DNA from: Heterodontus francisci
Lineage: Eukaryota
Direction: 5' to 3'
Assembly: GCF_036365525.1 (NCBI RefSeq)
Contig: NC_090418.1
Location: 7,480,304-7,544,303 of the forward strand
Length of the DNA: 64,000 nucleotides
In this document: positions 1,456-36,456 of the stretch, piece after piece
Layout: each line of letters begins with the position of its first letter
How positions within the stretch are numbered: the stretch's first letter is position 1
The notes under the pieces: model-generated
Told to the model about the DNA's origin: nothing
Seen by the model: the letters and a program-made list of their open reading frames with translations, nothing else
The model's database searches: none
Program-made: the position numbers and the translations under genes

Positions 1456-1553
1456 ATCTAATGCTGAGTGTTCCCTGTATTTCTCGCTGTGCTCCTGGAT
1501 TTTGTCCACATTCCTGTTTCCACATCATTGCTGTGGATTTCTGTATTTCACAG

Positions 1554-1730
1554 CGCGGGAGCCCCAAACTACAACAGCCCAGTTAACCTCCTCACTGACT
1601 GCAACATCTCCAGAAGGCAACAAACTGGGCCAGTGGGTGATCCTAATAATCAGGTCCATGCTCGCACTGGGAATACTGACGGTTGTTTGGCTGATTGGAA
1701 TTTATCTGATGAGGAGAAAGAAAGTTACGG
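1554..1730 (+). CDS. Stalk + transmembrane exon of an activating-type Ig-superfamily receptor (putative PILR-beta-like); upstream exons lie outside the window
   Basis: Acceptor TTTCACAG (AG 1552-1553), donor G|GTAATC (1731); 177 nt, phase 1-1. Encodes xREPQTTTAQLTSSLTATSPEGNKLGQ-WVILIIRSMLALGILTVVWLIGIYLM-RRKKVT: Thr/Ser stalk, hydrophobic helix with Arg (AGG 1652-1654), basic stop-transfer. Same phases as the TM exon of the downstream gene. Confidence 0.8.
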
Positions 1731-1871: not shown

Positions 1872-3075
1872 CAGCCTTGGTGCAAACTGAGCTGAAATCC
1901 AGAGGTGAGGTGAGAGTGAGTGCCCTTGAACAGCAAGGCAGCATTTGACCGAGGGTGGCATCAAGGAGCCCTAGCAAAATTGGAGTCAATGGGAATCAGA
2001 GGGAAAAACTCTTTGCTGGTTGGAGTCATACCTAGCACAAAGGAAGATGGTTGTGGTTGTTGGAGGTCAATCGTCTCAGACCCAGGACATCACTGCAGGA
2101 GTTCCTCAGGGTAGTGTCCTCGGCCCAACCATCTTCAGTTGCTTCATCAATGACTTTCCCTCCAACATAAGGTCAGAAGTGGTGATGATGGCTGAGGATT
2201 GCACAATGTTCAGTAACATTCACAACTTTTCAAGATACAGAGGTAGTCCGTGTCCACATACAGCAAGACCTGGACAATATTCAGGCTTGGGCTGATAAGT
2301 GACAAGTAACATTTGTGCCACACAAGTGCCAGGCAATGACCATCTCCAACAAGAGAGAATCTAACCATCTCCCCTTGACATTCAATGGCATTACCATCAC
2401 TTAATCCACCACCATTAACATCCTGGGGGTTACCATTGACCAGAAACTAAACTGGACCAGCTACATAAATACCGTGGCTACAAGAGCAGGTCAGAGGCTG
2501 GGAGTTCTGCGGTAATTAACTCACCCCCTGACTCCCCAAAGCCTGTCCACCATCTACAAGGCACTGGTCAGGAGTGTGATGAAATACTCTTCACTTGCCT
2601 GGATGGGTGCAGCTCCAAAAACAGTCAAGAGTCTTGACACCATCCAGGACAAAGCAGCCCGCTTGATTGGCACCCCATCTACAAACATTCACTCCCTCCA
2701 CCACCGACGCACAGTGGCAGCAGTGTGTACCATCTACAAGATGCACTGCAGCAACTCACCAAATCTTCTTCGACAGCATCTTCCAAACCCGCGACCTCTA
2801 CCACCTGGAAGGAGAAGGGCAGCAGATGCATGGGAACACCATCACCTGCAAGTTCCCCTCAAAGTCACACACCATCCTGACTTGGAACCATATCATTCGT
2901 TCCTTCACTGTTGCTGGGTCAAAATCCTGGAACTCCCTTCTTATCAGCACTCTGGGTGTACGTACAGCACACAGACTGCAGTGGTTCAAGAAGGAGGCTC
3001 ACCACCATCTTCTCAAGGGCAATTAGGGATGGGCAATAAATGCTGGTCTTGCCATTGACGCCCATGTCCCGTGAT
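1872..3075 (+). mobile_element. 5'-truncated non-LTR retrotransposon (CR1/L2-group LINE), frameshifted RT and 3' tail
   Basis: RT motifs in broken frames (KAAFDRGWHQG, GVPQGSVLGPTIFSCFIND, MAEDCTMF as decayed FADD); tail GGGATGGGCAATAAATGCTGG; other copies at 9.3, 18.7 and 24.4 kb. Confidence 0.9.
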
Positions 3076-4959: not shown

Positions 4960-5390
4960 TTACACCTGACGTCACTTACGGTTAATATTCCTCGACCTTA
5001 GGCACTGATTCCACCGATTTCACCTCTTTGCCGCTGCTTACACTGGCCCCAAACAGGACAAACTCGAAGACAATGTAGTGACGGGTATCACTCCTTTACA
5101 CCTAAGATTCCCTGATCTTTTAACACTAACTTTCCTCGGCCACGCTCGGATTTTAGCTGTTGTCTGGGAAGAAATCAGACGGAAGCTCAGAGCCCAGATC
5201 TGAGAGAGGAGGAGGGACTTGATATGAAGAGATAATTTCCCAATTGGAGACGGAAGTGGAACCAGAGAAATAGGAAGGAGAAAAACAGAACTAACTGGTC
5301 AGAAATAGTGAGTGTGTCACAAAGGCCGTCTCAGTATCCTGTGGTCTGTGAAGCCTCCTTCAGACTCACAGAGTGAGATGAGTAGCTGTC
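4960..5390 (+). promoter_or_regulatory. Putative promoter of the PILRA-like gene (no obvious TATA box)
   Basis: CRE TGACGTCA 4967-4974, GATA AGATAA 5230-5235, ETS CGGAAGTG 5251-5258 and RUNX TGTGGT 5340-5345, all upstream of ATG 5391. Motif matches only. Confidence 0.4.
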
Positions 5391-5433
5391 ATGGACTCTG
5401 TTCTCCATCTGATCATTCTGCATCTCTCCGTCG
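5391..5433 (+). CDS. PILRA-like inhibitory receptor, exon 1 (signal peptide)
   Basis: gtcATGG Kozak context; MDSVLHLIILHLSV; consensus donor G|GTGAGT, phase 1, joins the IgV exon in frame. Confidence 0.85.
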
Positions 5434-5619
5434 GTGAGTAAACCAAATTTTATTTTCCTTTCTCGAGTTTCGTGCCTCCATTTTAACATCCCTGCTCTAT
5501 CCATGCAGTCCCTCCCAGGGGCCTCCCACAGCTGCTCCTGGCTTTCCATTTAACACATGGATTAATCAATTACCACCAATGTGATGCCCACCCAAGTTGA
5601 AGAGTATAGGAGGGGGAAC

Positions 5620-6010
5620 AACAAGAACAGCAGGAAAACCTCCCAAGGTGCTCGCCAGAGGCATACGCAGAAAAGGGGCACAGTGCCAAAGCAGATATTA
5701 GGAGGAGTAACCCAAAGATAGGTCAATGAGGTGGGTCTTGACAGAGAGAGGCAGAGACGTTTTAGGGATGGAATTCCAGAGTTTAGGAATGAGATGGCTG
5801 AGGGCACAGACCAAAATGTTGGGGCAAAGGGAGTGAAGTCAGCACAAGAGACCGAAATTGGAAGAAAGCAGATATGTCGGAGGGTTGTCGGGCTGGAGGA
5901 GGTTACAGAGATAGGGAAGGGAGGAATCGAGACCATGAAAGGATTTAAAGACGAGGATGAGAATTTTACACTGGGGGCTTTGGTGGTCTGGGAGCCAGTG
6001 TAGGTCAGCA
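5620..6010 (-). mobile_element. Decayed L2-like LINE 3' fragment
   Basis: Reverse-complement similarity to the L2-like tails at 8280, 32460 and 35430 (GGAATTCCAGAG...GGAGGAGGTTACAGAGATAGGG). Confidence 0.6.
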
Positions 6011-6469
6011 AGCACAGTGAGAGGGGGGAGACTGGGTGAACAGGAATTGGAGTGGATAGGGTACAGTACAGCAGAGGTTTGACGGATGAGTTGAAGGTTA
6101 AGGAAGGTGGAGGATGGACAATGGGCCAGGACTGATCAGGAAGTCGTGGTCAAGATAATCGAACTGTGGTTTTTAAAACTGAAAAACAGAAATGGAGAGA
6201 GTAGGGAGGGCTCCACATTACAGTCATGGAGAAGTAACGGGCGGTTTAACACTGCGGGCACCTGGTGTCGTGTCCCTGATGGTGATGGGTGAGGGGTGGG
6301 AGGGGATTCAGTTACACAGAGAGATTAGACCAGGAGCCTGTCCAAGGCCAGCTCGCAGTCACTCCCCCAGACCCAAACATCGGGTACAAAGCAACATTTG
6401 GAGAGCACAAGAGGCAACCATAGAGACCGCCTCGAAACCAGGAAACAGTGGGAAAGAACAGAAAGAGAG

Positions 6470-7510
6470 GAATTTACAGGCTGGAATCTAATGCAGCAAT
6501 ACAATGCAGTTTATATATAGAATAACAGATACCCGGGAGTGAGTTACAGACTGGAATCTAATCGAAGGGTTCGGGGGGTTCATATATAGAATAACAGATA
6601 CCCGGGAGTGAGTTACAGACTGGAATCTAATCGAAGGGTTCAGGGGGTTTATATATAGAATAACAGATACCCGGGAGTGAGTTACAGACTGGAATCTAAT
6701 CGAGGGGTTCAGGGGGTTTATATATAGAATAACAGATACCCAGGAGTGAGTTACAGGCTGGAATCTAATCGAGGGGTTTGGGGGTTTATATATAGAATAA
6801 CAGATACCCGGGAGTGAGTTACAGGCTGGAATCTAATCGAGGGGTTCGGGGGGTTTATATATACAATAACAGATAACCAGGAGTGAGTTACAGACTGGAA
6901 TCTAATCAAGGGGTTCGGGGGGTTTATATATAAAATAACAGATACCCGGGAGTGAGTTACAGACTGGAATCTAATCAAGGGGTTCGGGGGGTTTATATAT
7001 AGAATAACAGATACCCGGGAGTGAGTTACAGACTGGAATCTAATCGAGGGGTTTGGGGGTTTATATATAAAATAACAGATACCCGGGAGTGAGTTACAGA
7101 CTGGAATCTAATCGAGGGGTTCGGGGGGTTTATATATAGAATAACAGATACCCGGGAGTGAGTTACAGACTGGAATCTAATCGAGGGTTCGGTGGGTTTA
7201 TATATAGAATAACAGATACCCGGGAGTGAGTTACAGACTGGAATCTAATCAAGGGGTTCGGGGGGTTTATATATAAAATAACAGATACCCGGGAGTGAGT
7301 TACAGACTGGAATCTAATCGAGGTGTTTGGGGGTTTATATATAAAATAACAGATACCCGGGAGTGAGTTACAGACTGGAATCTAATCGAGGGTTCGGTGG
7401 GTTTATATATCAAATAACAGATACCCGGGAGTGAGTTACAGACTGGAATCTAATCGAGGGGTTTGGGTGTTTATATATAGAATAACAGATACCCAGGAGT
7501 GAGTTACAGG
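6470..7510. repeat. 68-69 bp minisatellite (CTGGAATCTAATCGAGGGGTTCGGGGGGTTTATATATAGAATAACAGATACCCGGGAGTGAGTTACAGA), ~15 copies, intron 1
   Basis: Unit starts at 6551 and 6620 give a period of 69; copies are near-identical. Confidence 0.97.
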
Positions 7511-7627
7511 TGGCTATTTCAGATACAGGATTCCTCTATTACTGGGAGTATTCTGGAGGTAGTTGTCTATTGGTTGAGAGACTATTTATGATTCCTAAAT
7601 AACCATTTGCTGTTTCCTCTCTCTCAG

Positions 7628-7996
7628 TGATGATAAATGGAAATGATTTCCGTGTGTTCCAGCCCCCCAGCCTGGAGGGGGTGGTCGGGCAGTCGATCAT
7701 TATTCGCTGCTCATTCACTTACCCAGAAAACTACACACCCCAAAAGATTGACATTTCTTGGAGAAGACTTAATTTTCACGGAGAATTTATATTCAACACC
7801 TCAAAGGGGTACATTCACCCTGATTACCGAGGCCGGCTTGAATTCCTGGGTTCTCCATATAAGGAGAAGACCGGCACCATCAGGATAAATCAGCTGAAGT
7901 TTAGTGACTCAAACCAGTATTACTGTCGTGTGGTGACATCAGGACACAGACCCGAGATGTGGCAAAACATCCCTGGGACATTCCTCTCAGTCCGAG
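7628..7996 (+). CDS. PILRA-like inhibitory receptor, exon 2 (single V-set Ig domain)
   Basis: Acceptor CTCTCTCAG (AG 7626-7627), donor G|GTAAAC; 369 nt, phase 1-1. V-set motifs (IRC, ISWRR, D-x-x-x-Y-Y-C) and PILR-like segments SWRRLNFHG, IHPDYRGRL, YYCRV, WQNIPGTFLSV, compared with recalled human PILR SWRRGHFHG, IHKDYVNRL, YFCRV, WQSIEGTKLSI. Confidence 0.93.
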
Positions 7997-8132
7997 GTAA
8001 ACTTGCCTTTGGATTCCTGTGTTTTTCTCTGTATAATTTCATCTTAAGAACATATTTCTTTCTTAAATTGTGTTTCGGCGACACCTCAATTTTCAAACTC
8101 TCTTCGTTTTCAAATCCTTCCCGTTGCCTCGC

Positions 8133-8285
8133 ACCCCTTCCCCCCCACCCCACCTCACCCCCCCTCACCCCCCCCACCCCTCACCCACCCCCACCCCCCC
8201 CTCACCCCCCCCACCCCTCACCCACCCCCACCCCCCCTCACCCCCACCCCCCTTCACCCCCACCCACCCCCCCGTCCCGCAACCC
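8133..8285. repeat. C-rich low-complexity tract (CCCCA/CCCCTCA)
   Basis: Directly visible; produces the spurious poly-Pro/His of ORF 7627-8403. Confidence 0.9.
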
Positions 8286-8600
8286 CACAATCTCTGTAAC
8301 TTCCTCCGAGATCTCTGCACTCCTCAATTCTGACTCTTGCCCATCCCCCGATTTTAATCGCTCCGCCATTGGTGGCCGTGCCTTCAGCTGCCTGGGACCC
8401 TAAGCTCGGGAATCCCCTCCCTAAACCCTCTCCGCCTCTCTCTGCATCGCTCACCTCCTTGAGACACGACTCAGGATCGATCACTTTCCCGTCCTAATAT
8501 CTCCTTATGTGGCTCGGTGTCAATTGTTGCCTGATAACGTGTCTGTGAAGCGCGCTAGGCCGTTTTGTTGCTTTAGAGGCACTAAAGAAATGGAATTGTT
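8285..8600 (+). mobile_element. L2-like LINE 3' end
   Basis: CTCCGAGATCTCTGCACTCCTC...GCCGTGCCTTCAGCTGCCTGGG...CCTTATGTGGCTCGGTGTC; same family at 32460, 35430 and 37740. Confidence 0.7.
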
Positions 8601-9267
8601 GCTGCAACATGGCTGAGCCTTAATATTCTGGCCTCTGATTTGCCGACACTCGTCCAAGTAAAGGACGTCAGTTCCGTTTCCAGCCAATCAAGTGCCAAGT
8701 TTGAAAAGACGTGGGGCCAAGATCCAAAATGGCCACTGGAAATAAAGAAAGGGAAATGAAATAGAAGATGTGGAATCAAAGGTTATTTTGAAAATAAAGG
8801 AGAAAAGAAATTGAGTCGGTGCAGAATAAGATAATGGAGAACCTTGTGGCTCAGTGTTTTTCACTCTGTTCTAAACCTGTGGGATCTGGGTTGGAAGTTG
8901 AATTTGTTAAATGGGGAACAATGTCAACATTTTCAATTGACCCTCCCCCTGCCCCCCAGCCTCAACTGATTTTTGTGGGAGAGACTTCCAGATTCCCACT
9001 CCCCTTTGTTGAAGAAGTGCTTCCTGACATCACCCCTGAACTTCCTGGCTCTCATCTTCAGATTACACCCCCTTGTTCTGGATTCTCCCCCACTAGGGAC
9101 AATAGATTCTCTCTATCTACCCCGTCAAACCTTTATATTATCTTAAACACCTCAATTAAATAATACCTTAGCTTCTATATTCAAGGAAATACAAGCTCAG
9201 TCTGTGCAAACTATCTGTGGCTTTGTTACTGGTCTAGTAATTCAGAAAGTGTGACTCCAATGATGGT

Positions 9268-9990
9268 GAATCTAATCACCTCCCCTTGACATTCAATGGC
9301 ATTACCATCACTGAATCCCCCACTGTCTAAATCCTCGGGGTTACCATTGACCAGAAACTGAACAGGACCAGCCACATAAATACCGTGGCTACAAGAGCAG
9401 GTCAGAGGCTAGGAATCCTGCGGCGAGTAACTCACCTCCTGACTCCCCAAAGCCTGTTCACCATCTACAAGGCACAAGTCAGGAGTGTGATGGAATACTC
9501 TCCACTTGCCTGGATGGGTGCAGCTCCAACAACACTCAAGAAGCACGACACCATCCAGGACAAAGCAGCCCACTTGATTGGCACCCCATCTACAAACATT
9601 CACTCCCTCCACCACCGACGCACAGCGGCAGCAGTGTGTACCATCTGTGAGATGCACTGCAGCAACGCACCAGGGCTCCTTAGACAGCACCTTCCAAACC
9701 CGCGACCTCTACCAACTAGACGGACAAGAGCAGCAGATGCAAGGGAACACCACCACCTGCAAGTTCCCCTCCAAGTCACACACCATCCTGACTTGGAACT
9801 GTATCGCCGTTCCTTCACTGTCGCTGGGTCAAAATCCTGGGACTCCCTTCCTAACAGCACTGTGGGTGTACCTACCCCACATTGACTGCAGCGGTTCAAG
9901 AAGGCAGCTCACCACCACCTTCTCAAGGGCAATTGGGGATGGGCAATAAATGCTGGCCTGGCCAGCGATGCCCACAGCCCCGTGAATGAA
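9268..9990 (+). mobile_element. LINE 3' fragment (same family as 1872-3075)
   Basis: ORF2 C-terminal peptide YKAQVRSVMEYSPLAWMGAA; tail with AATAAA at 9945-9950. Confidence 0.9.
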
Positions 9991-10044
9991 TAGTTGAACA
10001 GGACGATAATTACACTGAGGTGATCTTTTATTTCTCTGTTTTAG

Positions 10045-10209
10045 CATGGAAACCTACTGCCAAGCCTACTACCGAACCCACTACCAAATCGGCAGCTAGT
10101 GCCACCTGGATGCCAGTGTTGATTGGATGCAGTGTTCTGGCCTTTCTGCTCATTTCCCTGGGGCTGGTAGCTGCAGTTTGCAGCTGGAAGAAGCAACGGC
10201 GTCAGCACG
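10045..10209 (+). CDS. PILRA-like inhibitory receptor, exon 3 (stalk + transmembrane)
   Basis: Acceptor TGTTTTAG, donor G|GTGAGT; 165 nt, phase 1-1; AWKPTAKPTTEPTTKSAASAT-WMPVLIGCSVLAFLLISLGLVAAVCSW-KKQRRQH; TM carries no charged residue. Confidence 0.92.
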
Positions 10210-10566
10210 GTGAGTGGCTCCTTCCCCTCTGCCCCGTCTACTGCCCGCAGCCTCTCTTCGCCCCAGACCCTCCTGTTGGCCCTTTGCTGTGCTTGCACCC
10301 GCAGGCCCCGGCTTCATTCCAGCCAGCCTAGAAGGTGGGAGTCAGCTGGCCGTTTAACTGTGGGGGGGGGGCATCGCGGTCATGCCTGATCCCGTCACCA
10401 TCATGTGATAGCGTAGCGATTAGAGAGACATCCCTGGGTCACTGCCCCCTTCCTCCATTAGCGGGGCTAAGATCAGGAGTAGATTTATTGTCCAGAGTCT
10501 AGGGTGAAGATTTGGATCTCAAATCATAGCATCTTTTATCATAGAAGGAGGCCATTCGGCTACTGT

Positions 10567-16892: not shown

Positions 16893-16936
16893 ATCCTTCC
16901 AACCAATCCCAACCTAATAATGCGCCTGCTGGGAAG
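16893..16936 (+). CDS. PILRA-like inhibitory receptor, exon 6
   Basis: Acceptor TATTTCAG, donor AAG|GTAAGA; 44 nt, phase 1 to 0; DPSNQSQPNNAPAGK. Confidence 0.8.
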
Positions 16937-18381: not shown

Positions 18382-18651
18382 TTAAGTTCACAGAATGAGA
18401 GTTTTGGGGTAATTTTTGTTTCGTAGGGCTCTTTGTCTCAAGGCTCCAGCAATCTTTCAGTTTCAAGGTCGCACAATCTACCAAGACAGTGTTTTGGGGT
18501 CGAAGACTACAAACAGGCTCCTTTAATGGAGAAGAGGAACTTCAACTCCTCCGTGACACAAATAGCACAGTTTCACAAAACATTTGGTAAAATTAAGCAA
18601 CTTTCCTCTCAACAGGATGATTGACAAATGTTGTGGTCAGTCTCTTTTTTT

Positions 18652-20112
18652 TATTCTTTCATGGGATGTGGGCGTTGCTGGTTAGGCCAGCATTTATTGC
18701 TCATCCCTAATTTCCCATGAGAATCACAGAATAATACAGCGCAGAAAAGGCCCTTCGGCCCATCGAGTCTGCACCGATGCATTAAAGACACTTTAGTGTC
18801 GGGTGAGAAGGTGGTGGTGAGCTGCAGTCCATATGAGGTACTTACACCCTCAGTGCTGTTAGGAAGGGAGTTCCAGGATTTTGACCCAGCGACAGTGAAG
18901 GAACGGCGATATAGTTCCAAGTCAGGATGGTGTGTGGCTTGGAGGGGAACTTGCAGGTGGTGGTGTTCCCATGCATCTACTGTCTTTGTCCTTCGTGGTG
19001 GTAGAGGTCGCGGGTTTGGAAGGTGCTGTCTAAGGAGTCTTGGTGCGTTGCTGCAGTGCATCTTGTAGATGGTACACACTGCTGCCACTGTGCATCAGTG
19101 GTGGAGGGAGTGAATGTTTGTGGATGGGGTGCCAATCAAGCGGGCTGCTTTGTCCTGGATGGTGTCGAGCATCTTGAGTGTTGTTGGAGCTGCACCCATC
19201 CAGGCAAGTGGAGAGTATTCCATCACACTCCTGACTTGTGCCTTGTAGATGGTGGAGAGTCTTTGGGGAGTCAGGAGGTGAGTTACTCGCCTCAGGATTC
19301 CTAGCCTCTGACCTGCTCTTGTAGCCACGGTATTTATATGGCTACTCCAGTTCAATTTCTGGTCAATAGTAACCCCCAAGATGTTGTTAGTGGGGGATTC
19401 AGCGATGGTAATGACATTGAATATCAAGGAGAGATGGTTAGATTCTCTCTTGTTGGAGATGGTCATTGCCTGGCACTTGTGTGGCGCAAATATTACTTGC
19501 CACTTATCAGCCCAAGCTTGGATATTGTCCAGGTCTTGCTGCATTTCTACATGGACTGCTTCAGTATCTGAGGAGACATGAATGGTGCTGAACATTGTGC
19601 AATCATCAGTGAACATCCGCACTTCTGACCTAATGATTGAAGGAAGGTCATTGATGAAGCAGCTGAAGATGGTCAGGCCTAGGACACTACCCTGAGGAAC
19701 TACTGCAGTGATGTCCTGGAGCTGAGATGATTGACCTCCAACAACCACAACCATCTTCCTTTGTGCTAGATATGACTCCAACCAGTGGAGAGTTTTCCCC
19801 GATTCCCACTGACTCCAGTTTTGCTGGGGCTCCCTAATGCCATACTCGGTCAAATGCTGCTTTGATATCAAGGGCAGTCACTCTCACCTCACCTCTTGAG
19901 TTCAGCTCTTTTGTCCATGTTTGAACCAAGGCTGTAATGAGGTCAGGAGCTGAGCGGCCCTGGCAGAACCCAAACTGAGCATCACTGAGCCAGTTATTGC
20001 TAAGCAGGTGTTGCTTGATGGCTCTGTTGATGACACCTTCCATCACTTTACTGATAATTGAGAGTGGACTGATGGGGCGGTAATTGGCGGGTTGGACTTG
20101 TCCTGCCTGTCT
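18652..20112 (-). mobile_element. LINE (same family as 1872-3075), the longest copy here, RT domain with frameshifts
   Basis: PANYRPISPLSIISKVME, AQFGFCQG, ALDIKAAFDRVWH, VPQGSVLG, MFTDDCTMF. Confidence 0.92.
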
Positions 20113-20169
20113 GTCATAATGTGCTATCAGGGGAAGCTTTCCCTCTGAACATAGGGGTGGAACGTCTAG

Positions 20170-20520
20170 GAATGAATTAGAAATGTGGCCATCAATTTGC
20201 ACATGGCGAGCTCCCACAAACAGCACTGTGATAATGACCGGATCATCTGATTTTGGGATGTTGTTTGAGGGAGAATATTGACAGGGGGACACCACCACAG
20301 TTCTTCTTTGAAATAGTACTATGGGATCTCTTACAGCCAGCTGAGAGAGCGGACAGGACTGCAGTTTAACATCTCCTCCAAACCACAGCATTCCCCTCAG
20401 TACCAGCATGGACACATTTTGCGTTATAATGGCTCAGTACTGCAGTGGAAGTGCCAGCATGAACGTTGTGTTCAAGTCCCTGGAGGGGACAGCCTGCTGC
20501 CTCAGAGGTGAGTTCACTAC
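20170..20520 (-). mobile_element. Deu-domain SINE fragment
   Basis: CCCACAAACAGCACTGTGATAATGACC..CTTCTTTGAAATAGTACTATGGGATCT..CTGAGAGAGCGGAC. Confidence 0.6.
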
Positions 20521-21713: not shown

Positions 21714-21845
21714 GAAAATGATTTAGAAGGGATTGTCTATGCGACACTACATGTCAAAGAAAGTTCAGAAACAACAATCAATGCCTTGTCATCAGAGGTG
21801 CATATTGTATATGCAGCTGTGAAGTTCCATGCTGAGACTAACTAG
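21714..21845 (+). CDS. PILRA-like inhibitory receptor, exon 7 (two ITIMs and stop)
   Basis: Acceptor TTTCTCTTGCAG, phase 0; ENDLEGIVYATLHVKESSETTINALSSEVHIVYAAVKFHAETN* (TAG 21843-21845). ITIMs at 21732-21749 and 21804-21821; GIVYATL parallels the recalled human PILRA GIVYASL. Spliced CDS is 834 nt = 277 aa. Confidence 0.92.
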   Translation, partial: ENDLEGIVYATLHVKESSETTINALSSEVHIVYAAVKFHAETN

Positions 21846-25619: not shown

Positions 25620-26205
25620 GTGAGGGAGAGGGACTGAGAGACACCAGTCAGTGTACAGATATCACCCTGAGAGAGAGGGACTGAGAGACACCAGTCAGTG
25701 TACAGATATCACCCTGAGAGAGAGGGACTGAGAGACACCAGTCAGTGTACAGATATCACCCTGAGAGAGAGGGACTGAGAGACACCAGTCAGTGTACAGA
25801 TATCACCCTGAGAGAGAGGGACTGAGAGACACCAGTCAGTGTACAGATATCACCCTGAGAGAGAGGGACTGAGAGACACCAGTCAGTGTACAGATATCAC
25901 CCTGAGAGAGAGGGACTGAGAGACACCAGTCAGTGTACAGATATCACCCTGAGAGAGAGGGACTGAGAGACACCAGTCAGTGTACAGATATCACCCTGAG
26001 AGAGAGGGACTGAGAGACACTAGTCAGTGTACAGATATCACCCTGAGAGAGAGGGGCTGAGAGACACCTGTCAGTGTACAGATATCACCCTGAGAGAGAG
26101 GGACTGAGAGACACCAGTTAGTGTACAGATATCACCCTGAGAGAGAGGGGCTGAGAGACACCAGTCAGTGTACAGATATCACCCTGAGAGAGAGGGACGG
26201 AGAGA
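25620..26205. repeat. 47-bp minisatellite (GAGAGACACCAGTCAGTGTACAGATATCACCCTGAGAGAGAGGGACT), ~12 copies
   Basis: Period 47 (25683 to 25730), almost perfect copies. Confidence 0.97.
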
Positions 26206-26242
26206 CCCCAGACAACACCAAACACCAGCCACAGTCCCATTA

Positions 26243-33524: not shown

Positions 33525-34258
33525 GAGGGTGTGCGGAGTGCGGGGGAGAGTGGGATTAGACTGGGTGGATATTAAAGGGTGTGGGGAGTGAGGAGGAGAG
33601 TGGGATTAGACTGGGTGGATATTAAAGGGTGTGGGGAGTGAGGAGGAGAGTGGGATTAGGCTGGGTGGGATATGAAAGGGTGTGGGGAGTGAGGGGGAGA
33701 GTGGGATTAGACTGGGTGGATATTAAAGGGTGTGGGGAGTGAGGGGGAGAGTGGGATTAGACTGGGTGGATATTAAAGGGTGTGGGGAGTGAGGGGGAGA
33801 GTGGGATTAGACTGGGTGGATATTAAAGGGGGCGGGGAGTGAGGAGGAGAGTGGGATTAGGCTGGGTGGATATTAAAGGGTGTGGGGAGTGAGGAGGAGA
33901 GTGGGATTAGACTGGGTGGGATATGAAAGGGTGTGGGGAGTGAGGAGGAGAGTGGGATTAGGCTGGGTGGGATATGAAAGGGTGTGGGGAGTGAGGGGGA
34001 GAGTGGGATTAGACTGGGTGGATATGAAAGGGTGTGGGGAGTGAGGGGGAGAGTGGGATTAGACTGGGTGGATATTAAAGGGTGCGGGGAGTGAGGGGGA
34101 GAGTGGGATTAGACTGGGTGGGATATGAAAGGGTGCGGGGAGTGAGGGGGAGAGTGGGATTAGGCTGGGTGGATATTAAAGGGTGTGGGGAGTGAGGGGG
34201 AGAGTGGGATTAGACTGGGTGGATATTAAAGGGGGCGGGGAGTGAGGGGGATTAGACT
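33525..34258. repeat. 50-51 bp G-rich minisatellite (GGGTGTGGGGAGTGAGGGGGAGAGTGGGATTAGACTGGGTGGATATTAAA), ~14 copies
   Basis: Directly visible tandem units. Confidence 0.97.
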
Positions 34259-35802: not shown

Positions 35803-36330
35803 TGTGCCCCCTCTCACACTAACGGGATCACACTGTGCCCCCTCTCACACTAATGGGATCACACTGTGCCCCCTCTCACACTAACGGGATCATACTGTGC
35901 CCCCTCTCACACTAACGGGATCACACTGTGCCCCCTCTCACGCTAATGGGATCACACTGTGCCCCCTCTCACGCTAATGGGATCACACTGTGCCCCCTCT
36001 CACACTAATGGGATCACACTGTGCCCCCTCTCACACTAACGGGATCATACTGTGCCCCCTCTCACACTAACGGGATCACACTGTGCCCCCTCTCACACTA
36101 ATGGGATCACACTGTGCCCCCTCTCACACTAACGGGATCACACTGTGCCCCCTCTCACACTAACGGGATCACACTGTGCCCCCTCTCACACTAACGGGAT
36201 CACACTGTGCCCCCTCTCACACTAATGGGATCACACTGTGCCCCCTCTCACACTAACGGGATCACACTGTGCCCCCTCTCACACTAATGGGATCACACTG
36301 TGCCCCCCCAACACTAACGGGATCACACGA
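35803..36330. repeat. 31-bp minisatellite (TGTGCCCCCTCTCACACTAACGGGATCACAC), ~17 copies
   Basis: Directly visible; begins right at the end of the L2 tail. Confidence 0.97.
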
Positions 36331-36456
36331 TGCCCCCCCCCCCCACTTCTCACATTAATGGGTACATGCGTCAGTACCTTGTCTGGCTTTGAACCTTGTC
36401 TGCGCCTCACAGAGTCCTCACAGCAGTCGGAGTTCAGAGAGAGAGGAAGCTCTCAC

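What the first reader, a model, noticed from the sequence alone, without database searches (positions are those of the whole stretch)
7628..7996. IgV keeps both canonical cysteines and the sialic-acid-binding arginine: an ancestral-looking PILR/Siglec fold
Seen: B-strand Cys (TGC 7708-7710, IRCSF), F-strand Cys followed directly by Arg (YYCRV, CGT 7927-7929), FHG (Gly 7780-7782) and G-strand WQ. Knowledge (recalled): human PILR-alpha lacks the B-strand Cys (IPFSF) and binds sialylated O-glycans through R126 in YFCRV, W139/Q140 and F76-G78; the G78R variant lowers binding. Siglecs keep the Arg but replace the F-strand Cys and use a B-E disulfide. Inference: this domain combines the standard B-F disulfide with the sialic-acid site, a plausible ancestral state for both families.
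Basis: partly seen in the sequence, partly recalled or inferred. Interest (0 to 1): 0.8.

Follow-up and report, generated by a model that had tools for sequence, protein, structure and literature searches.

The report
Shark PILR-type inhibitory receptor V exon
This exon encodes the single immunoglobulin domain of a shark member of the PILR family of paired immune receptors; it keeps the ordinary cysteine pair that mammalian PILRs have lost, together with the sugar-binding residues, which is the normal state outside mammals rather than a special intermediate.

Summary
Window 7628-7996 (+) is a phase-1/phase-1 exon encoding a 122-residue V-set domain. It has only two cysteines (C27 on strand B, C99 on strand F), Arg100 directly after C99, FHG at 49-51 and WQ at 111-112.

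It is the V exon of a transcribed, spliced, PILR-alpha-type inhibitory receptor gene: leader 5391-5433, V exon, stalk/TM 10045-10209, and a tail exon with two ITIMs at 21714-21845. Human PILR-alpha/beta are the best solved matches by sequence (E 2.4e-18) and by fold (Z 19.2, rmsd 2.0 Å).

The "ancestral" reading is only partly supported. Both cysteines are present in 28 of 28 other cartilaginous-fish rows, 8 of 8 caecilian, 3 of 3 tuatara, 4 of 4 turtle and 53 of 54 frog V-domain rows. All 16 mammalian rows have Phe at the B position. So the cysteine pair is the ordinary non-mammalian state.

Siglec-15 has the same arrangement in a solved structure: a C64-C142 bond joining the two sheets, with R143 next to it. 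The combination is therefore already known. Sialic-acid binding is inferred, not shown. Verdict: a new member of a known family, of low to moderate interest.

The parts
5391..5433 (+). Leader (signal peptide) exon: ATG at 5391, 14 codons plus one carried G, donor GTGAGT at 5434
   Evidence: tblastn to the leader of a Scyliorhinus torazame PILR-named protein, 13 of 15 identical. Sequence read. RNA contig X2 record 9 joins 5318-5432 directly to 7627-7996.
7628..7996 (+). V-set Ig exon (the finding), phase 1 at both ends, 122 whole codons from 7630 to 7995
   Evidence: AF2 model mean pLDDT 93.6. Best fold matches are human PILR-alpha/beta. Covered by RNA contigs in runs X1-X3.
7708..7710 (+). Cys27, B strand (Phe in all 16 mammalian PILR rows)
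7762..7782 (+). R45 to G51 (RRLNFHG), the C-C' segment; counterparts of human R72, F76 and G78
   Evidence: Alignment chain window to Lynx and Lynx to human 3wuz. Function of the human residues from passages of PMC6235402.
7924..7929 (+). Cys99-Arg100 on the F strand; counterparts of human C125-R126
7960..7965 (+). Trp111-Gln112 on the G strand; counterparts of human W139-Q140
   Evidence: The 4nfd entry title (a Leu-to-Trp mutant in complex with sialic acid) is.
10045..10209 (+). Thr/Pro-rich stalk and transmembrane exon. The TM stretch is about 10116-10187 and has no charged residue. Followed by KKQRRQH.
   Evidence: tblastn to a Carcharodon PILR-named protein, E 4.4e-9. Splice sites read. 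RNA contig X3 record 23 joins the end of the V exon to 10043/10045 with GT..AG.
16893..16936 (+). Small cytoplasmic exon (D-PSNQSQPNNAPAGK); by homology and splice sites only
   Evidence: tblastn to a Heptranchias protein, 10 of 15 identical, E 0.011 in the restricted search. Acceptor and donor read. No RNA evidence was obtained here.
21714..21845 (+). Last coding exon: ITIM IVYATL at 21732-21749, ITIM IVYAAV at 21804-21821, stop TAG at 21843-21845
   Evidence: tblastn to the Heptranchias tail, E 3.5e-10, 51% identical. Sequence read. Its link to the upstream exons is inferred, since it lies outside the stretch laid with reads.
1538..1729 (+). Context: stalk/TM exon of the upstream neighbour gene, with an Arg in the membrane span (activating type)
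   Evidence: tblastn to Carcharodon and Cetorhinus PILR-named proteins, E 1.4e-15 and 3.4e-13.

Best explanation
The exon encodes the only extracellular domain of an inhibitory, PILR-alpha-type paired receptor of a cartilaginous fish. The gene reads leader, V-set domain, Thr/Pro-rich stalk, uncharged transmembrane helix, and a cytoplasmic tail with two ITIMs. Just upstream lies an activating-type paralogue with an Arg in its membrane span. The V domain is a Siglec-type V-set closed by the ordinary B-F disulfide (C27-C99). On its G-F-C-C' face it carries the same residues that human PILR-alpha uses to hold sialic acid: R100 for the salt bridge, Q112 and W111 beside it, and F49, G51 and R45 on the C-C' loop. 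Most likely it binds sialylated, probably O-linked, glycans on other cells through R100 and then damps the cell through phosphatases recruited to the ITIMs. The cysteine pair is simply the state that all non-mammalian relatives keep; mammals replaced the B-strand Cys by Phe. Shown here: exon structure, transcription and two splice joints, homology, predicted fold, and the residue pattern across taxa. Inferred: the disulfide itself, sialic-acid binding, ITIM signalling, and the link of the last two exons to this transcript.
For: Sequence: the best single-domain solved match is human PILR-alpha (9pd2 E 2.4e-18; 3wuz 2.8e-18, over residues 8-121). The next single-domain families are nectin-1 at 3.6e-7 and Siglec-15 at 2.6e-6. 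Relatives: 10 of 10 word-search hits are shark or ray proteins that NCBI names PILR alpha/beta, 56-65% identical. The profile search adds chimaera, tuatara, caecilian, frog, 16 mammalian PILR proteins and 2 Siglec-15. Fold: the AF2 model has mean pLDDT 93.6. Foldseek ranks 1-6 are all human PILR-alpha/beta, TM 0.85-0.87, rmsd 1.6-2.1 Å. VIA-align gives Z 19.2 for 9pd2, against at most 15.8 for generic V-sets such as myelin P0 and nanobodies. Site: R45, F49, G51, R100, W111 and Q112 align with human R72, F76, G78, R126, W139 and Q140, and the roles of the human residues are in passages of PMC6235402. The same six residues are present in 21 of 28 other cartilaginous-fish rows and 9 of 16 mammalian rows. 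Gene: exons and splice sites. RNA contigs of runs X1-X3 join leader to V and V to TM, the latter with GT..AG. Cysteine pair: 28/28 cartilaginous fish, 8/8 caecilian, 3/3 tuatara, 4/4 turtle, 53/54 frog, 2/2 Siglec-15, 0/16 mammal.
Against: No binding data exist for any non-mammalian PILR that I could find. One human contact residue, W59, has no counterpart, because the B-C loop is one residue shorter and reads E33 there. Peptide co-recognition may therefore differ. Relatives do lose the Arg without losing the fold: 0 of 4 turtle rows, 16 of 54 frog rows and 23 of 28 cartilaginous-fish rows keep it. The site is therefore dispensable in some paralogues. The RNA contigs over the V exon differ from the window at three places: 7900 T>C (F91L), 7911 A>G (silent) and 7922 A>C (Y98S). 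They may come from another allele or a near-identical paralogue, and the window's exact version was not among the listed contigs. All three runs are one sample, and their RNA label is a guess by the index, supported only by the intron-skipping joints. Orthology to mammalian PILR is not shown: the tree leaves the window in an unresolved group and synteny was not tested.
Confidence: 0.8

Rival explanations
1. One reading: this domain is a surviving intermediate that represents the common ancestor of both the PILR and the Siglec families, joining the standard disulfide with the sialic-acid site.
For: The fold scores are tied within about 1 Z between PILR (19.2-18.1), sialoadhesin (18.4) and MAG (17.9), with Siglec-15 at 17.6. 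Siglec-15, which a paper passage lists among the Siglecs present before tetrapods and teleosts split, shares the B-F pair and the Cys-Arg motif.
Against: The state is common to all sampled non-mammalian PILR-like genes and to Siglec-15, so this locus holds no special position. The tree has no supported branch linking the families: the split that separates the Siglec-15 pair plus caecilian domains from the other rows has support of only 70/84, and the root is arbitrary. No classical Siglec was in the data set. The canonical B-F pair is the default of V-set domains, so keeping it says little about ancestry.
Confidence: 0.15
2. It is a PILR-like receptor by descent but not a lectin. The Arg and its neighbours are kept for another reason, and the ligand is a protein surface.
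For: Many relatives have replaced the Arg: turtles H or Q in 4 of 4 rows, frogs in 38 of 54 rows, and two lamniform activating forms have L. The human contact W59 is missing.
Against: Six of the residues named for sialic-acid and ligand binding in human PILR-alpha are identical here and in 21 of 28 other cartilaginous-fish rows. That conservation spans the distance from sharks to mammals and is hard to explain without the same function. In the two lamniform forms that lost the Arg, the FHG segment is changed too (RFG), as if the site decays as a unit.
Confidence: 0.15
3. It belongs to another V-set receptor family (Siglec-15-like, or pIgR/CD300-like), and the PILR names in databases are only best-hit labels.
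For: pIgR chains top the phmmer list by whole-sequence score (4.9e-21). The Pfam Ig_CD22 model scores 25.9 bits, just under its cut-off of 27.
Against: The pIgR score is the sum of three domains, each with a per-domain E-value of 6e-5 or worse, against one full-length match at 2.4e-18 for PILR. The RNA joins the V exon straight to the TM exon, so there is no C2-set domain as in Siglecs, and the window holds only one Ig exon. The TM has no Lys as Siglec-15 has (passage). The domain has only two cysteines.
Confidence: 0.04
4. The exon is a silent or decaying copy in a multigene cluster.
For: The listed RNA contigs carry three differences from the window, two of them amino-acid changes. R26 replaces a Pro that nearly all relatives have.
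Against: The frame is open, both splice sites are canonical, all conserved core residues are present and the model is confident. Contigs identical to the window over the leader (115 letters) and the TM exon (166 letters) are joined to the V exon.
Confidence: 0.03

Closest known systems
Human PILR-alpha (PDB 3wuz, 3wv0, 9pd2) and PILR-beta (4nfc, 4nfd)
   Same: A single Siglec-type V-set ectodomain, 36-38% identical, rmsd 1.6-2.1 Å to the model. Counterparts of R72, F76, G78, C125-R126 and W139-Q140 are present. Stalk, TM and ITIM-bearing tail are present, with an activating neighbour gene.
   Different: Human and all 16 mammalian rows have Phe at the B-strand cysteine place, leaving C125 without its usual partner; the shark domain has Cys. 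The B-C loop is one residue shorter and lacks W59. The neighbour's membrane charge is Arg; the Lys/DAP12 pairing of mammalian PILR-beta is recalled for the Lys, and passages name DAP12.
Siglec-15 (PDB 7zoz)
   Same: The V-set has a bond joining the two sheets (C64-C142) and the essential Arg (R143) directly after the F-strand Cys (passages). Both Siglec-15 rows align C at B and CR at F. Fold Z 17.6, rmsd 2.0 Å.
   Different: 22-24% identity. Siglec-15 has a second Ig domain, an extra C'' strand with a second disulfide (C95-C104), and a TM Lys for DAP12. WQ is replaced by YE or YK.
[quoted passage not shown]
   Same: 54-67% identical V domains with the same leader, exon phases, cysteine pair and binding-site residues. 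Both ITIM-tailed and TM-Arg forms occur.
   Different: The window has Arg26 before the B-strand Cys, where 25 of the 28 other cartilaginous-fish rows have Pro. No relative above 67% identity was found, so this paralogue or species is not in the protein collection searched.
Sialoadhesin and MAG V-set domains (1qfo, 5lfv)
   Same: The fold is tied with PILR within about 1 Z (18.4 and 17.9). An F-strand Arg binds sialic acid (recalled).
   Different: 18-25% identity. They are followed by many C2-set domains. The B-E intrasheet disulfide is recalled, not checked here.

Membership tests
[quoted passage not shown] | A single N-terminal V-set domain whose closest solved relatives by sequence and fold are PILR-alpha/beta | tested here: met
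   phmmer E 2.4e-18 over the full domain. Foldseek ranks 1-6. VIA Z 19.2-17.7.
[quoted passage not shown] | F-strand Arg after the Cys (human R126), with Q140, W139, F76, G78 and R72 | tested here: met
   R100, Q112, W111, F49, G51 and R45 by alignment. Roles of the human residues from PMC6235402 passages. W59 has no counterpart.
[quoted passage not shown] | Type I membrane protein with no further Ig domain: stalk, TM, and an ITIM tail in the alpha form | tested here: met
   V joined to TM in RNA. Only one Ig exon in the window. Uncharged TM. Two ITIM-pattern motifs. The tail is linked by homology only.
[quoted passage not shown] | An adjacent activating partner with a charged TM residue | tested here: inconclusive
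   A TM exon with Arg lies at 1538-1729 on the same strand. Its V exon lies outside the window, so likeness of the two ectodomains could not be tested.
[quoted passage not shown] | Orthology: shared ancestry with the mammalian PILRA/PILRB locus (synteny, supported clade) | tested here: inconclusive
   The tree places mammals inside an unresolved group with the shark rows (93/72, drawn open). Synteny was not tested; no flanking conserved gene was seen in the window.
[quoted passage not shown] | Sialidase-sensitive binding to sialylated O-glycoprotein ligands | not testable with these tools
   Needs recombinant protein.
Siglecs | V-set domain followed by one or more C2-set domains | tested here: not met
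   The RNA contig joins the V exon directly to the stalk/TM exon. There is no second Ig exon in 64 kb.
Siglecs | Essential Arg on the F strand | tested here: met
   R100.
Siglecs | Intrasheet B-E disulfide plus an inter-domain Cys (classical Siglecs; recalled) | tested here: not met
   The domain has only two cysteines, at the B and F positions. Siglec-15 itself departs from this rule.
pIgR / CD300 V-set receptors | A full-domain match better than to other families, and a second cysteine pair in the V domain (the latter recalled) | tested here: not met
   Per-domain E-values are 6e-5 or worse against 2.4e-18 for PILR. The domain has only two cysteines.

The most novel reading that the evidence does not exclude
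The disulfide-closed, Arg-bearing V-set seen here may be the original vertebrate I-type sialic-acid module, from which PILR and Siglec-15 both descend. On this reading, the replacement of the B-strand Cys by Phe on the mammalian stem freed the domain for the large open-to-closed 'clamp' movement and the combined sugar-plus-peptide recognition described for human PILR-alpha. A shark PILR would then be a more rigid lectin that reads sialic acid without needing the peptide.
Probability: 0.12. Interest if true: 0.55.

Novelty: new member of a known kind. Interest (0 to 1): 0.28.

Why it matters
This puts a date on the PILR sialic-acid site. The same six residues are present in sharks, a chimaera, a caecilian, the tuatara and mammals, so the site is at least as old as jawed vertebrates. 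It also shows that the missing disulfide of human PILR-alpha is a mammalian novelty, not a family trait. That gives a natural pair of proteins, with and without the B-F bond, for asking what the loss did to the ligand-induced movement of PILR-alpha, a receptor studied for herpes simplex virus entry and Alzheimer's risk. For genome annotation it is an ordinary, correctly recognisable family member.

Tried and rejected
Translating from 7628 gives stops; the exon is phase 1 and the frame starts at 7630.

I tried to make the solved-structure search print the PILR alignment by giving only the C-terminal part of the exon. pIgR chains still filled the five printed places, so nothing was gained. I then queried with the Lynx PILR-alpha protein, which printed the human chains.

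Lu et al. 2014 (PMC4050567) is not held. I did not try Kuroki et al. 2014. The statement that mammalian PILR lacks the B-F bond therefore rests on sequences, not on a paper's text.

Two literature searches for PILR in sharks or other non-mammals found nothing on the subject. For 'PILR' plus 'shark', 17 papers hold both terms and none of the 12 listed titles is on the subject. The phrase 'paired immunoglobulin-like type 2' occurs in none of the 15 papers listed. I saw only listings for these, and the searches cover only the held library.

A permissive search for further cytoplasmic exons between 10210 and 21713 found only the exon at 16893-16936. A small exon may still be missing.

The tree gave no supported placement for the window and no supported link between PILR and Siglec-15; I use it only for the mammalian clade (100/95). 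The frog domains sit on very long branches and one joins the mammals artefactually, as the tool warned.

I did not use the large representative search or the protein atlas, because the family was not in doubt. Supplementary files were not opened. Supplementary Fig. 3 of PMC10264397 (superposition of Siglec-15 on other Siglecs) could bear on the disulfide comparison.

Full report
THE OBSERVATION

Window 7628-7996 on the + strand is bounded by AG (7626-7627) and GT (7997-7998). Read from 7628 it has stops. Read from 7630 it is open for 122 codons. It is therefore a phase-1/phase-1 exon, the usual form of an Ig-domain exon.

- Cys27: TGC 7708-7710, in IIIRCSF
- FHG at residues 49-51, with Gly51 at 7780-7782
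- Cys99-Arg100: 7924-7929, in YYCRV
- Trp111-Gln112: 7960-7965

C27 and C99 are the only cysteines. Pfam calls the domain V-set (E 3.8e-11, 43.6 bits, cut-off 26).

WHAT GENE IT BELONGS TO

A tblastn of the exon's product against the whole window finds no second Ig exon. Mapping relatives onto the window and reading the splice sites gives this model on the + strand:
- Leader: 5391-5433 (ATG, 14 codons, one carried G, donor GTGAGT).
- V exon: 7628-7996.
- Thr/Pro-rich stalk plus transmembrane exon: 10045-10209. There is no charged residue in the span, and KKQRRQH follows it.
- Small cytoplasmic exon: 16893-16936. This rests on homology and splice sites only.
- Last exon: 21714-21845. It carries two ITIM-pattern motifs (IVYATL at 21732-21749, IVYAAV at 21804-21821) and a TAG stop.

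The phases agree across all junctions. A further small cytoplasmic exon cannot be excluded. I searched the model exon by exon and never joined the exons.

Upstream, at 1538-1729 on the same strand, lies the stalk/TM exon of a neighbouring paralogue with an Arg in the membrane span. That is the activating type. Two earlier notes of this scan point at the same neighbour.

IS IT EXPRESSED?

One index search gave runs that hold parts of 7400-10400. I laid four of them on 5300-10400. All four are stored as contigs, and the index only guesses that they are RNA.

In the three runs of one sample (X1-X3):
- Contigs cover exactly the leader, the V exon and the TM exon.
- X2 record 9 runs from 5318-5432 straight into 7627-7996.
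- X3 record 23 joins the last letters of the V exon to 10043/10045, skipping 2048 letters with GT..AG ends, and runs on for about 1040 letters downstream of the laid stretch.

Such intron-skipping joints show spliced RNA.

Against a simple reading:
- The V-exon contigs differ from the window at 7900 (T>C, F91L), 7911 (A>G, silent) and 7922 (A>C, Y98S).
- In X1 and X3 the same V exon follows a leader that does not fit the window over about 65 letters.

At least two near-identical transcripts, alleles or paralogues, therefore share this V exon. The window's exact version was not among the listed contigs. The leader (115 letters) and TM exon (166 letters) contigs fit with no difference. The fourth run (X5, another organism) does not cover the exons.

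WHICH FAMILY

Among solved structures the best single-domain sequence match is human PILR-alpha (9pd2 E 2.4e-18; 3wuz 2.8e-18 over residues 8-121). PILR-beta follows (4.8e-17). pIgR chains head the list only because three domains add up; each scores 6e-5 or worse. The next single-domain families are nectin-1 (3.6e-7) and Siglec-15 (2.6e-6).

The word search returned 10 proteins with E of 0.001 or better among 18 candidates. All are from sharks or a ray, all are named PILR alpha or beta by NCBI, and they are 56-65% identical. A profile of these returned 48 proteins among 6272 candidates: more sharks, a stingray, chimaera, tuatara, a caecilian, a frog, 16 mammalian PILR proteins (one from a source without an organism name) and two Siglec-15. 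A third search, seeded with the non-mammalian tetrapod and chimaera proteins, added four turtles, two caecilians and many frogs.

An AlphaFold2 model of the exon's product was built on an alignment of 40 of the 49 proteins then in hand. I left out five multi-domain proteins and four near-duplicates. The model has mean pLDDT 93.6 and pTM 0.86.
- Foldseek ranks 1-6 are all human PILR-alpha/beta (TM 0.85-0.87, rmsd 1.6-2.1 Å, 36-38% identity). Sialoadhesin, Siglec-15 and MAG follow.
- VIA-align gives PILR Z 19.2-17.7, sialoadhesin 18.4, MAG 17.9 and Siglec-15 17.6. Generic V-sets such as myelin P0 and nanobodies score at most 15.8.

The fold is therefore the PILR/Siglec kind of V-set. Fold alone does not separate PILR from Siglecs; sequence and gene structure do.

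THE BINDING SITE

The printed alignment of the Lynx protein to the human chains shows that human PILR-alpha has Phe at the B-strand cysteine place, then RR..FHG, YFCRV and WQ. With the chain's offset of 30, these are F53, R72, F76, G78, C125, R126, W139 and Q140. Through the Lynx row of my profile alignment, the window's R45, F49, G51, C99, R100, W111 and Q112 fall on R72, F76, G78, C125, R126, W139 and Q140.

Passages of PMC6235402 state the roles of the human residues:
- R126 makes the salt bridge to the sialic-acid carboxylate.
- Q140 positions R126.
- F76A and R72A cut binding to about a fifth.
- G78R lowers binding.
- All non-human PILRA and all PILRB have Gly at position 78.

PILR-beta (4nfc) has Leu where PILR-alpha has W139. 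The entry 4nfd is the Leu-to-Trp mutant solved with sialic acid.

One human contact, W59, has no counterpart: the shark B-C loop is one residue shorter. The whole domain fits at 1.6-2.0 Å, and the Arg sits directly after the invariant F-strand Cys in both proteins, so the backbone positions must coincide.

HOW GENERAL IS THE CYSTEINE PAIR?

I cut all V domains out of the 79 stored proteins with a profile of the shark domains and tabulated the columns. Rows are domains, several per protein in amphibians, and some are isoforms of one gene, so they are not independent.

| Group | Rows with Cys at both B and F | Rows with Arg after the F Cys | Rows with the full six-residue site |
|---|---|---|---|
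| Other cartilaginous fish | 28 of 28 | 23 of 28 | 21 of 28 |
| Caecilian | 8 of 8 | 5 of 8 | 2 of 8 |
| Tuatara | 3 of 3 | 1 of 3 | 1 of 3 |
| Turtle (one more row does not reach both columns) | 4 of 4 | 0 of 4 | 0 of 4 |
| Frog (one row has Tyr at B; three more rows do not reach both columns) | 53 of 54 | 16 of 54 | 0 of 54 |
| Siglec-15 | 2 of 2 | 2 of 2 | 0 of 2 |
| Mammal | 0 of 16 (all Phe at B, Cys at F) | 16 of 16 | 9 of 16 |

In two lamniform activating forms the Arg is Leu and the FHG reads RFG, as if the site decays as a whole.

In the tree the mammalian rows form one supported clade (100/95) on a long stem, so a single Cys-to-Phe change fits. Deeper branches are unresolved, and the window has no supported nearest relative; its best identity is 67%, to Scyliorhinus torazame (three rows under 100 residues were left out).

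The cysteine pair is thus the retained, ordinary state. The mammalian Phe is the derived one.

IS THE COMBINATION NEW?

No. Passages of the Siglec-15 structure paper (PMC10264397) say that its two sheets are joined by a C64-C142 disulfide and that R143 on strand F makes the salt bridge. That is the same Cys-Arg pair with the same bond. A passage of PMC7226832 lists Siglec-15 among the Siglecs that predate the split of tetrapods and teleosts, and says its V-set cysteines and the Arg are conserved.

That classical Siglecs use a B-E bond is my recollection too, and I checked it in no call. A recent review (PMC13358205 passages) already treats PILR as an I-type lectin with a Siglec-like fold and a shared critical Arg.

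I found no paper on PILR in cartilaginous fish (listings only). These searches cover only the held library.

VERDICT

The exon is the V exon of an ordinary, expressed member of the PILR family in a shark, of the inhibitory type, next to an activating partner. Its cysteine pair plus Arg site is the plesiomorphic state shared by all sampled non-mammalian relatives and by Siglec-15. It is not a special intermediate.

Two modest points come out of the comparison:
- The full PILR sialic-acid site is conserved from cartilaginous fish to mammals.
- The loss of the B-strand Cys is confined to mammals in this sample.

Sialic-acid binding, the disulfide itself and ITIM signalling remain inferences.

Noticed in passing
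window 38790-64000 and 3-1452: A 32-base satellite fills the last 25 kb of the window (796 copies, 87% matches) and has a strong G-over-C skew of 0.35-0.41. A 32-base array of 45 copies at the window's start has the opposite skew and gives long spurious ORFs on both strands. I did not compare the two units, so whether they are the same satellite is not known.
   Followed up: partly
window 7705-7707: Arg26 stands directly before the B-strand Cys, where 25 of the 28 other cartilaginous-fish rows and most other rows have Pro. The RNA contigs show no difference there, so the Arg is also in the transcribed version. It should face away from the sugar-binding face; its effect is unknown.
   Followed up: partly
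window 7900, 7911, 7922: The RNA contigs of one sample carry three clustered differences in the V exon (F91L, silent, Y98S). The last is at the aromatic position just before the F-strand Cys, which is Tyr or Phe in nearly all shark and mammalian rows. The same V exon is attached to two different leaders in the contigs, which suggests an allele or a near-identical paralogue.
   Followed up: partly
window 1538-1729: Stalk/TM exon of an upstream paralogue with Arg in the membrane span (LIIRS...), like the TM-Arg forms of Carcharodon and Cetorhinus. Mammalian PILR-beta uses Lys (recalled). The adaptor for the shark form is unknown.
   Followed up: partly
window 6509-7509, just upstream of the V exon: A 69-base tandem repeat (14.6 copies, 94% matches) fills most of the intron before the V exon. 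Further arrays lie at 25621-26211 (47 bases), 33526-34251 (50/101 bases) and 35803-36337 (31 bases).
   Followed up: no
window 2020-3060, 9385-9950, 18651-20415: Several fragments of a reverse-transcriptase-bearing retroelement lie on both strands, one of them inside the intron between the V and TM exons. Contigs of all four runs pile up there at very high depth.
   Followed up: no
stored proteins P0071-P0073, P0075 (turtles): Turtle proteins named PILR keep both cysteines and the RxxxFxG segment but have His or Gln in place of the Arg and Arg in place of Gln112. They look like PILR relatives that have lost or changed the sialic-acid site.
   Followed up: partly
stored proteins P0012, P0018, P0050-P0070 (caecilians, tuatara, frogs): In amphibians and the tuatara, PILR-like V domains occur two or three in a row in one protein, often under unrelated names such as 'protein turtle homolog B'. 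Mammals and sharks mostly have one domain.
   Followed up: no
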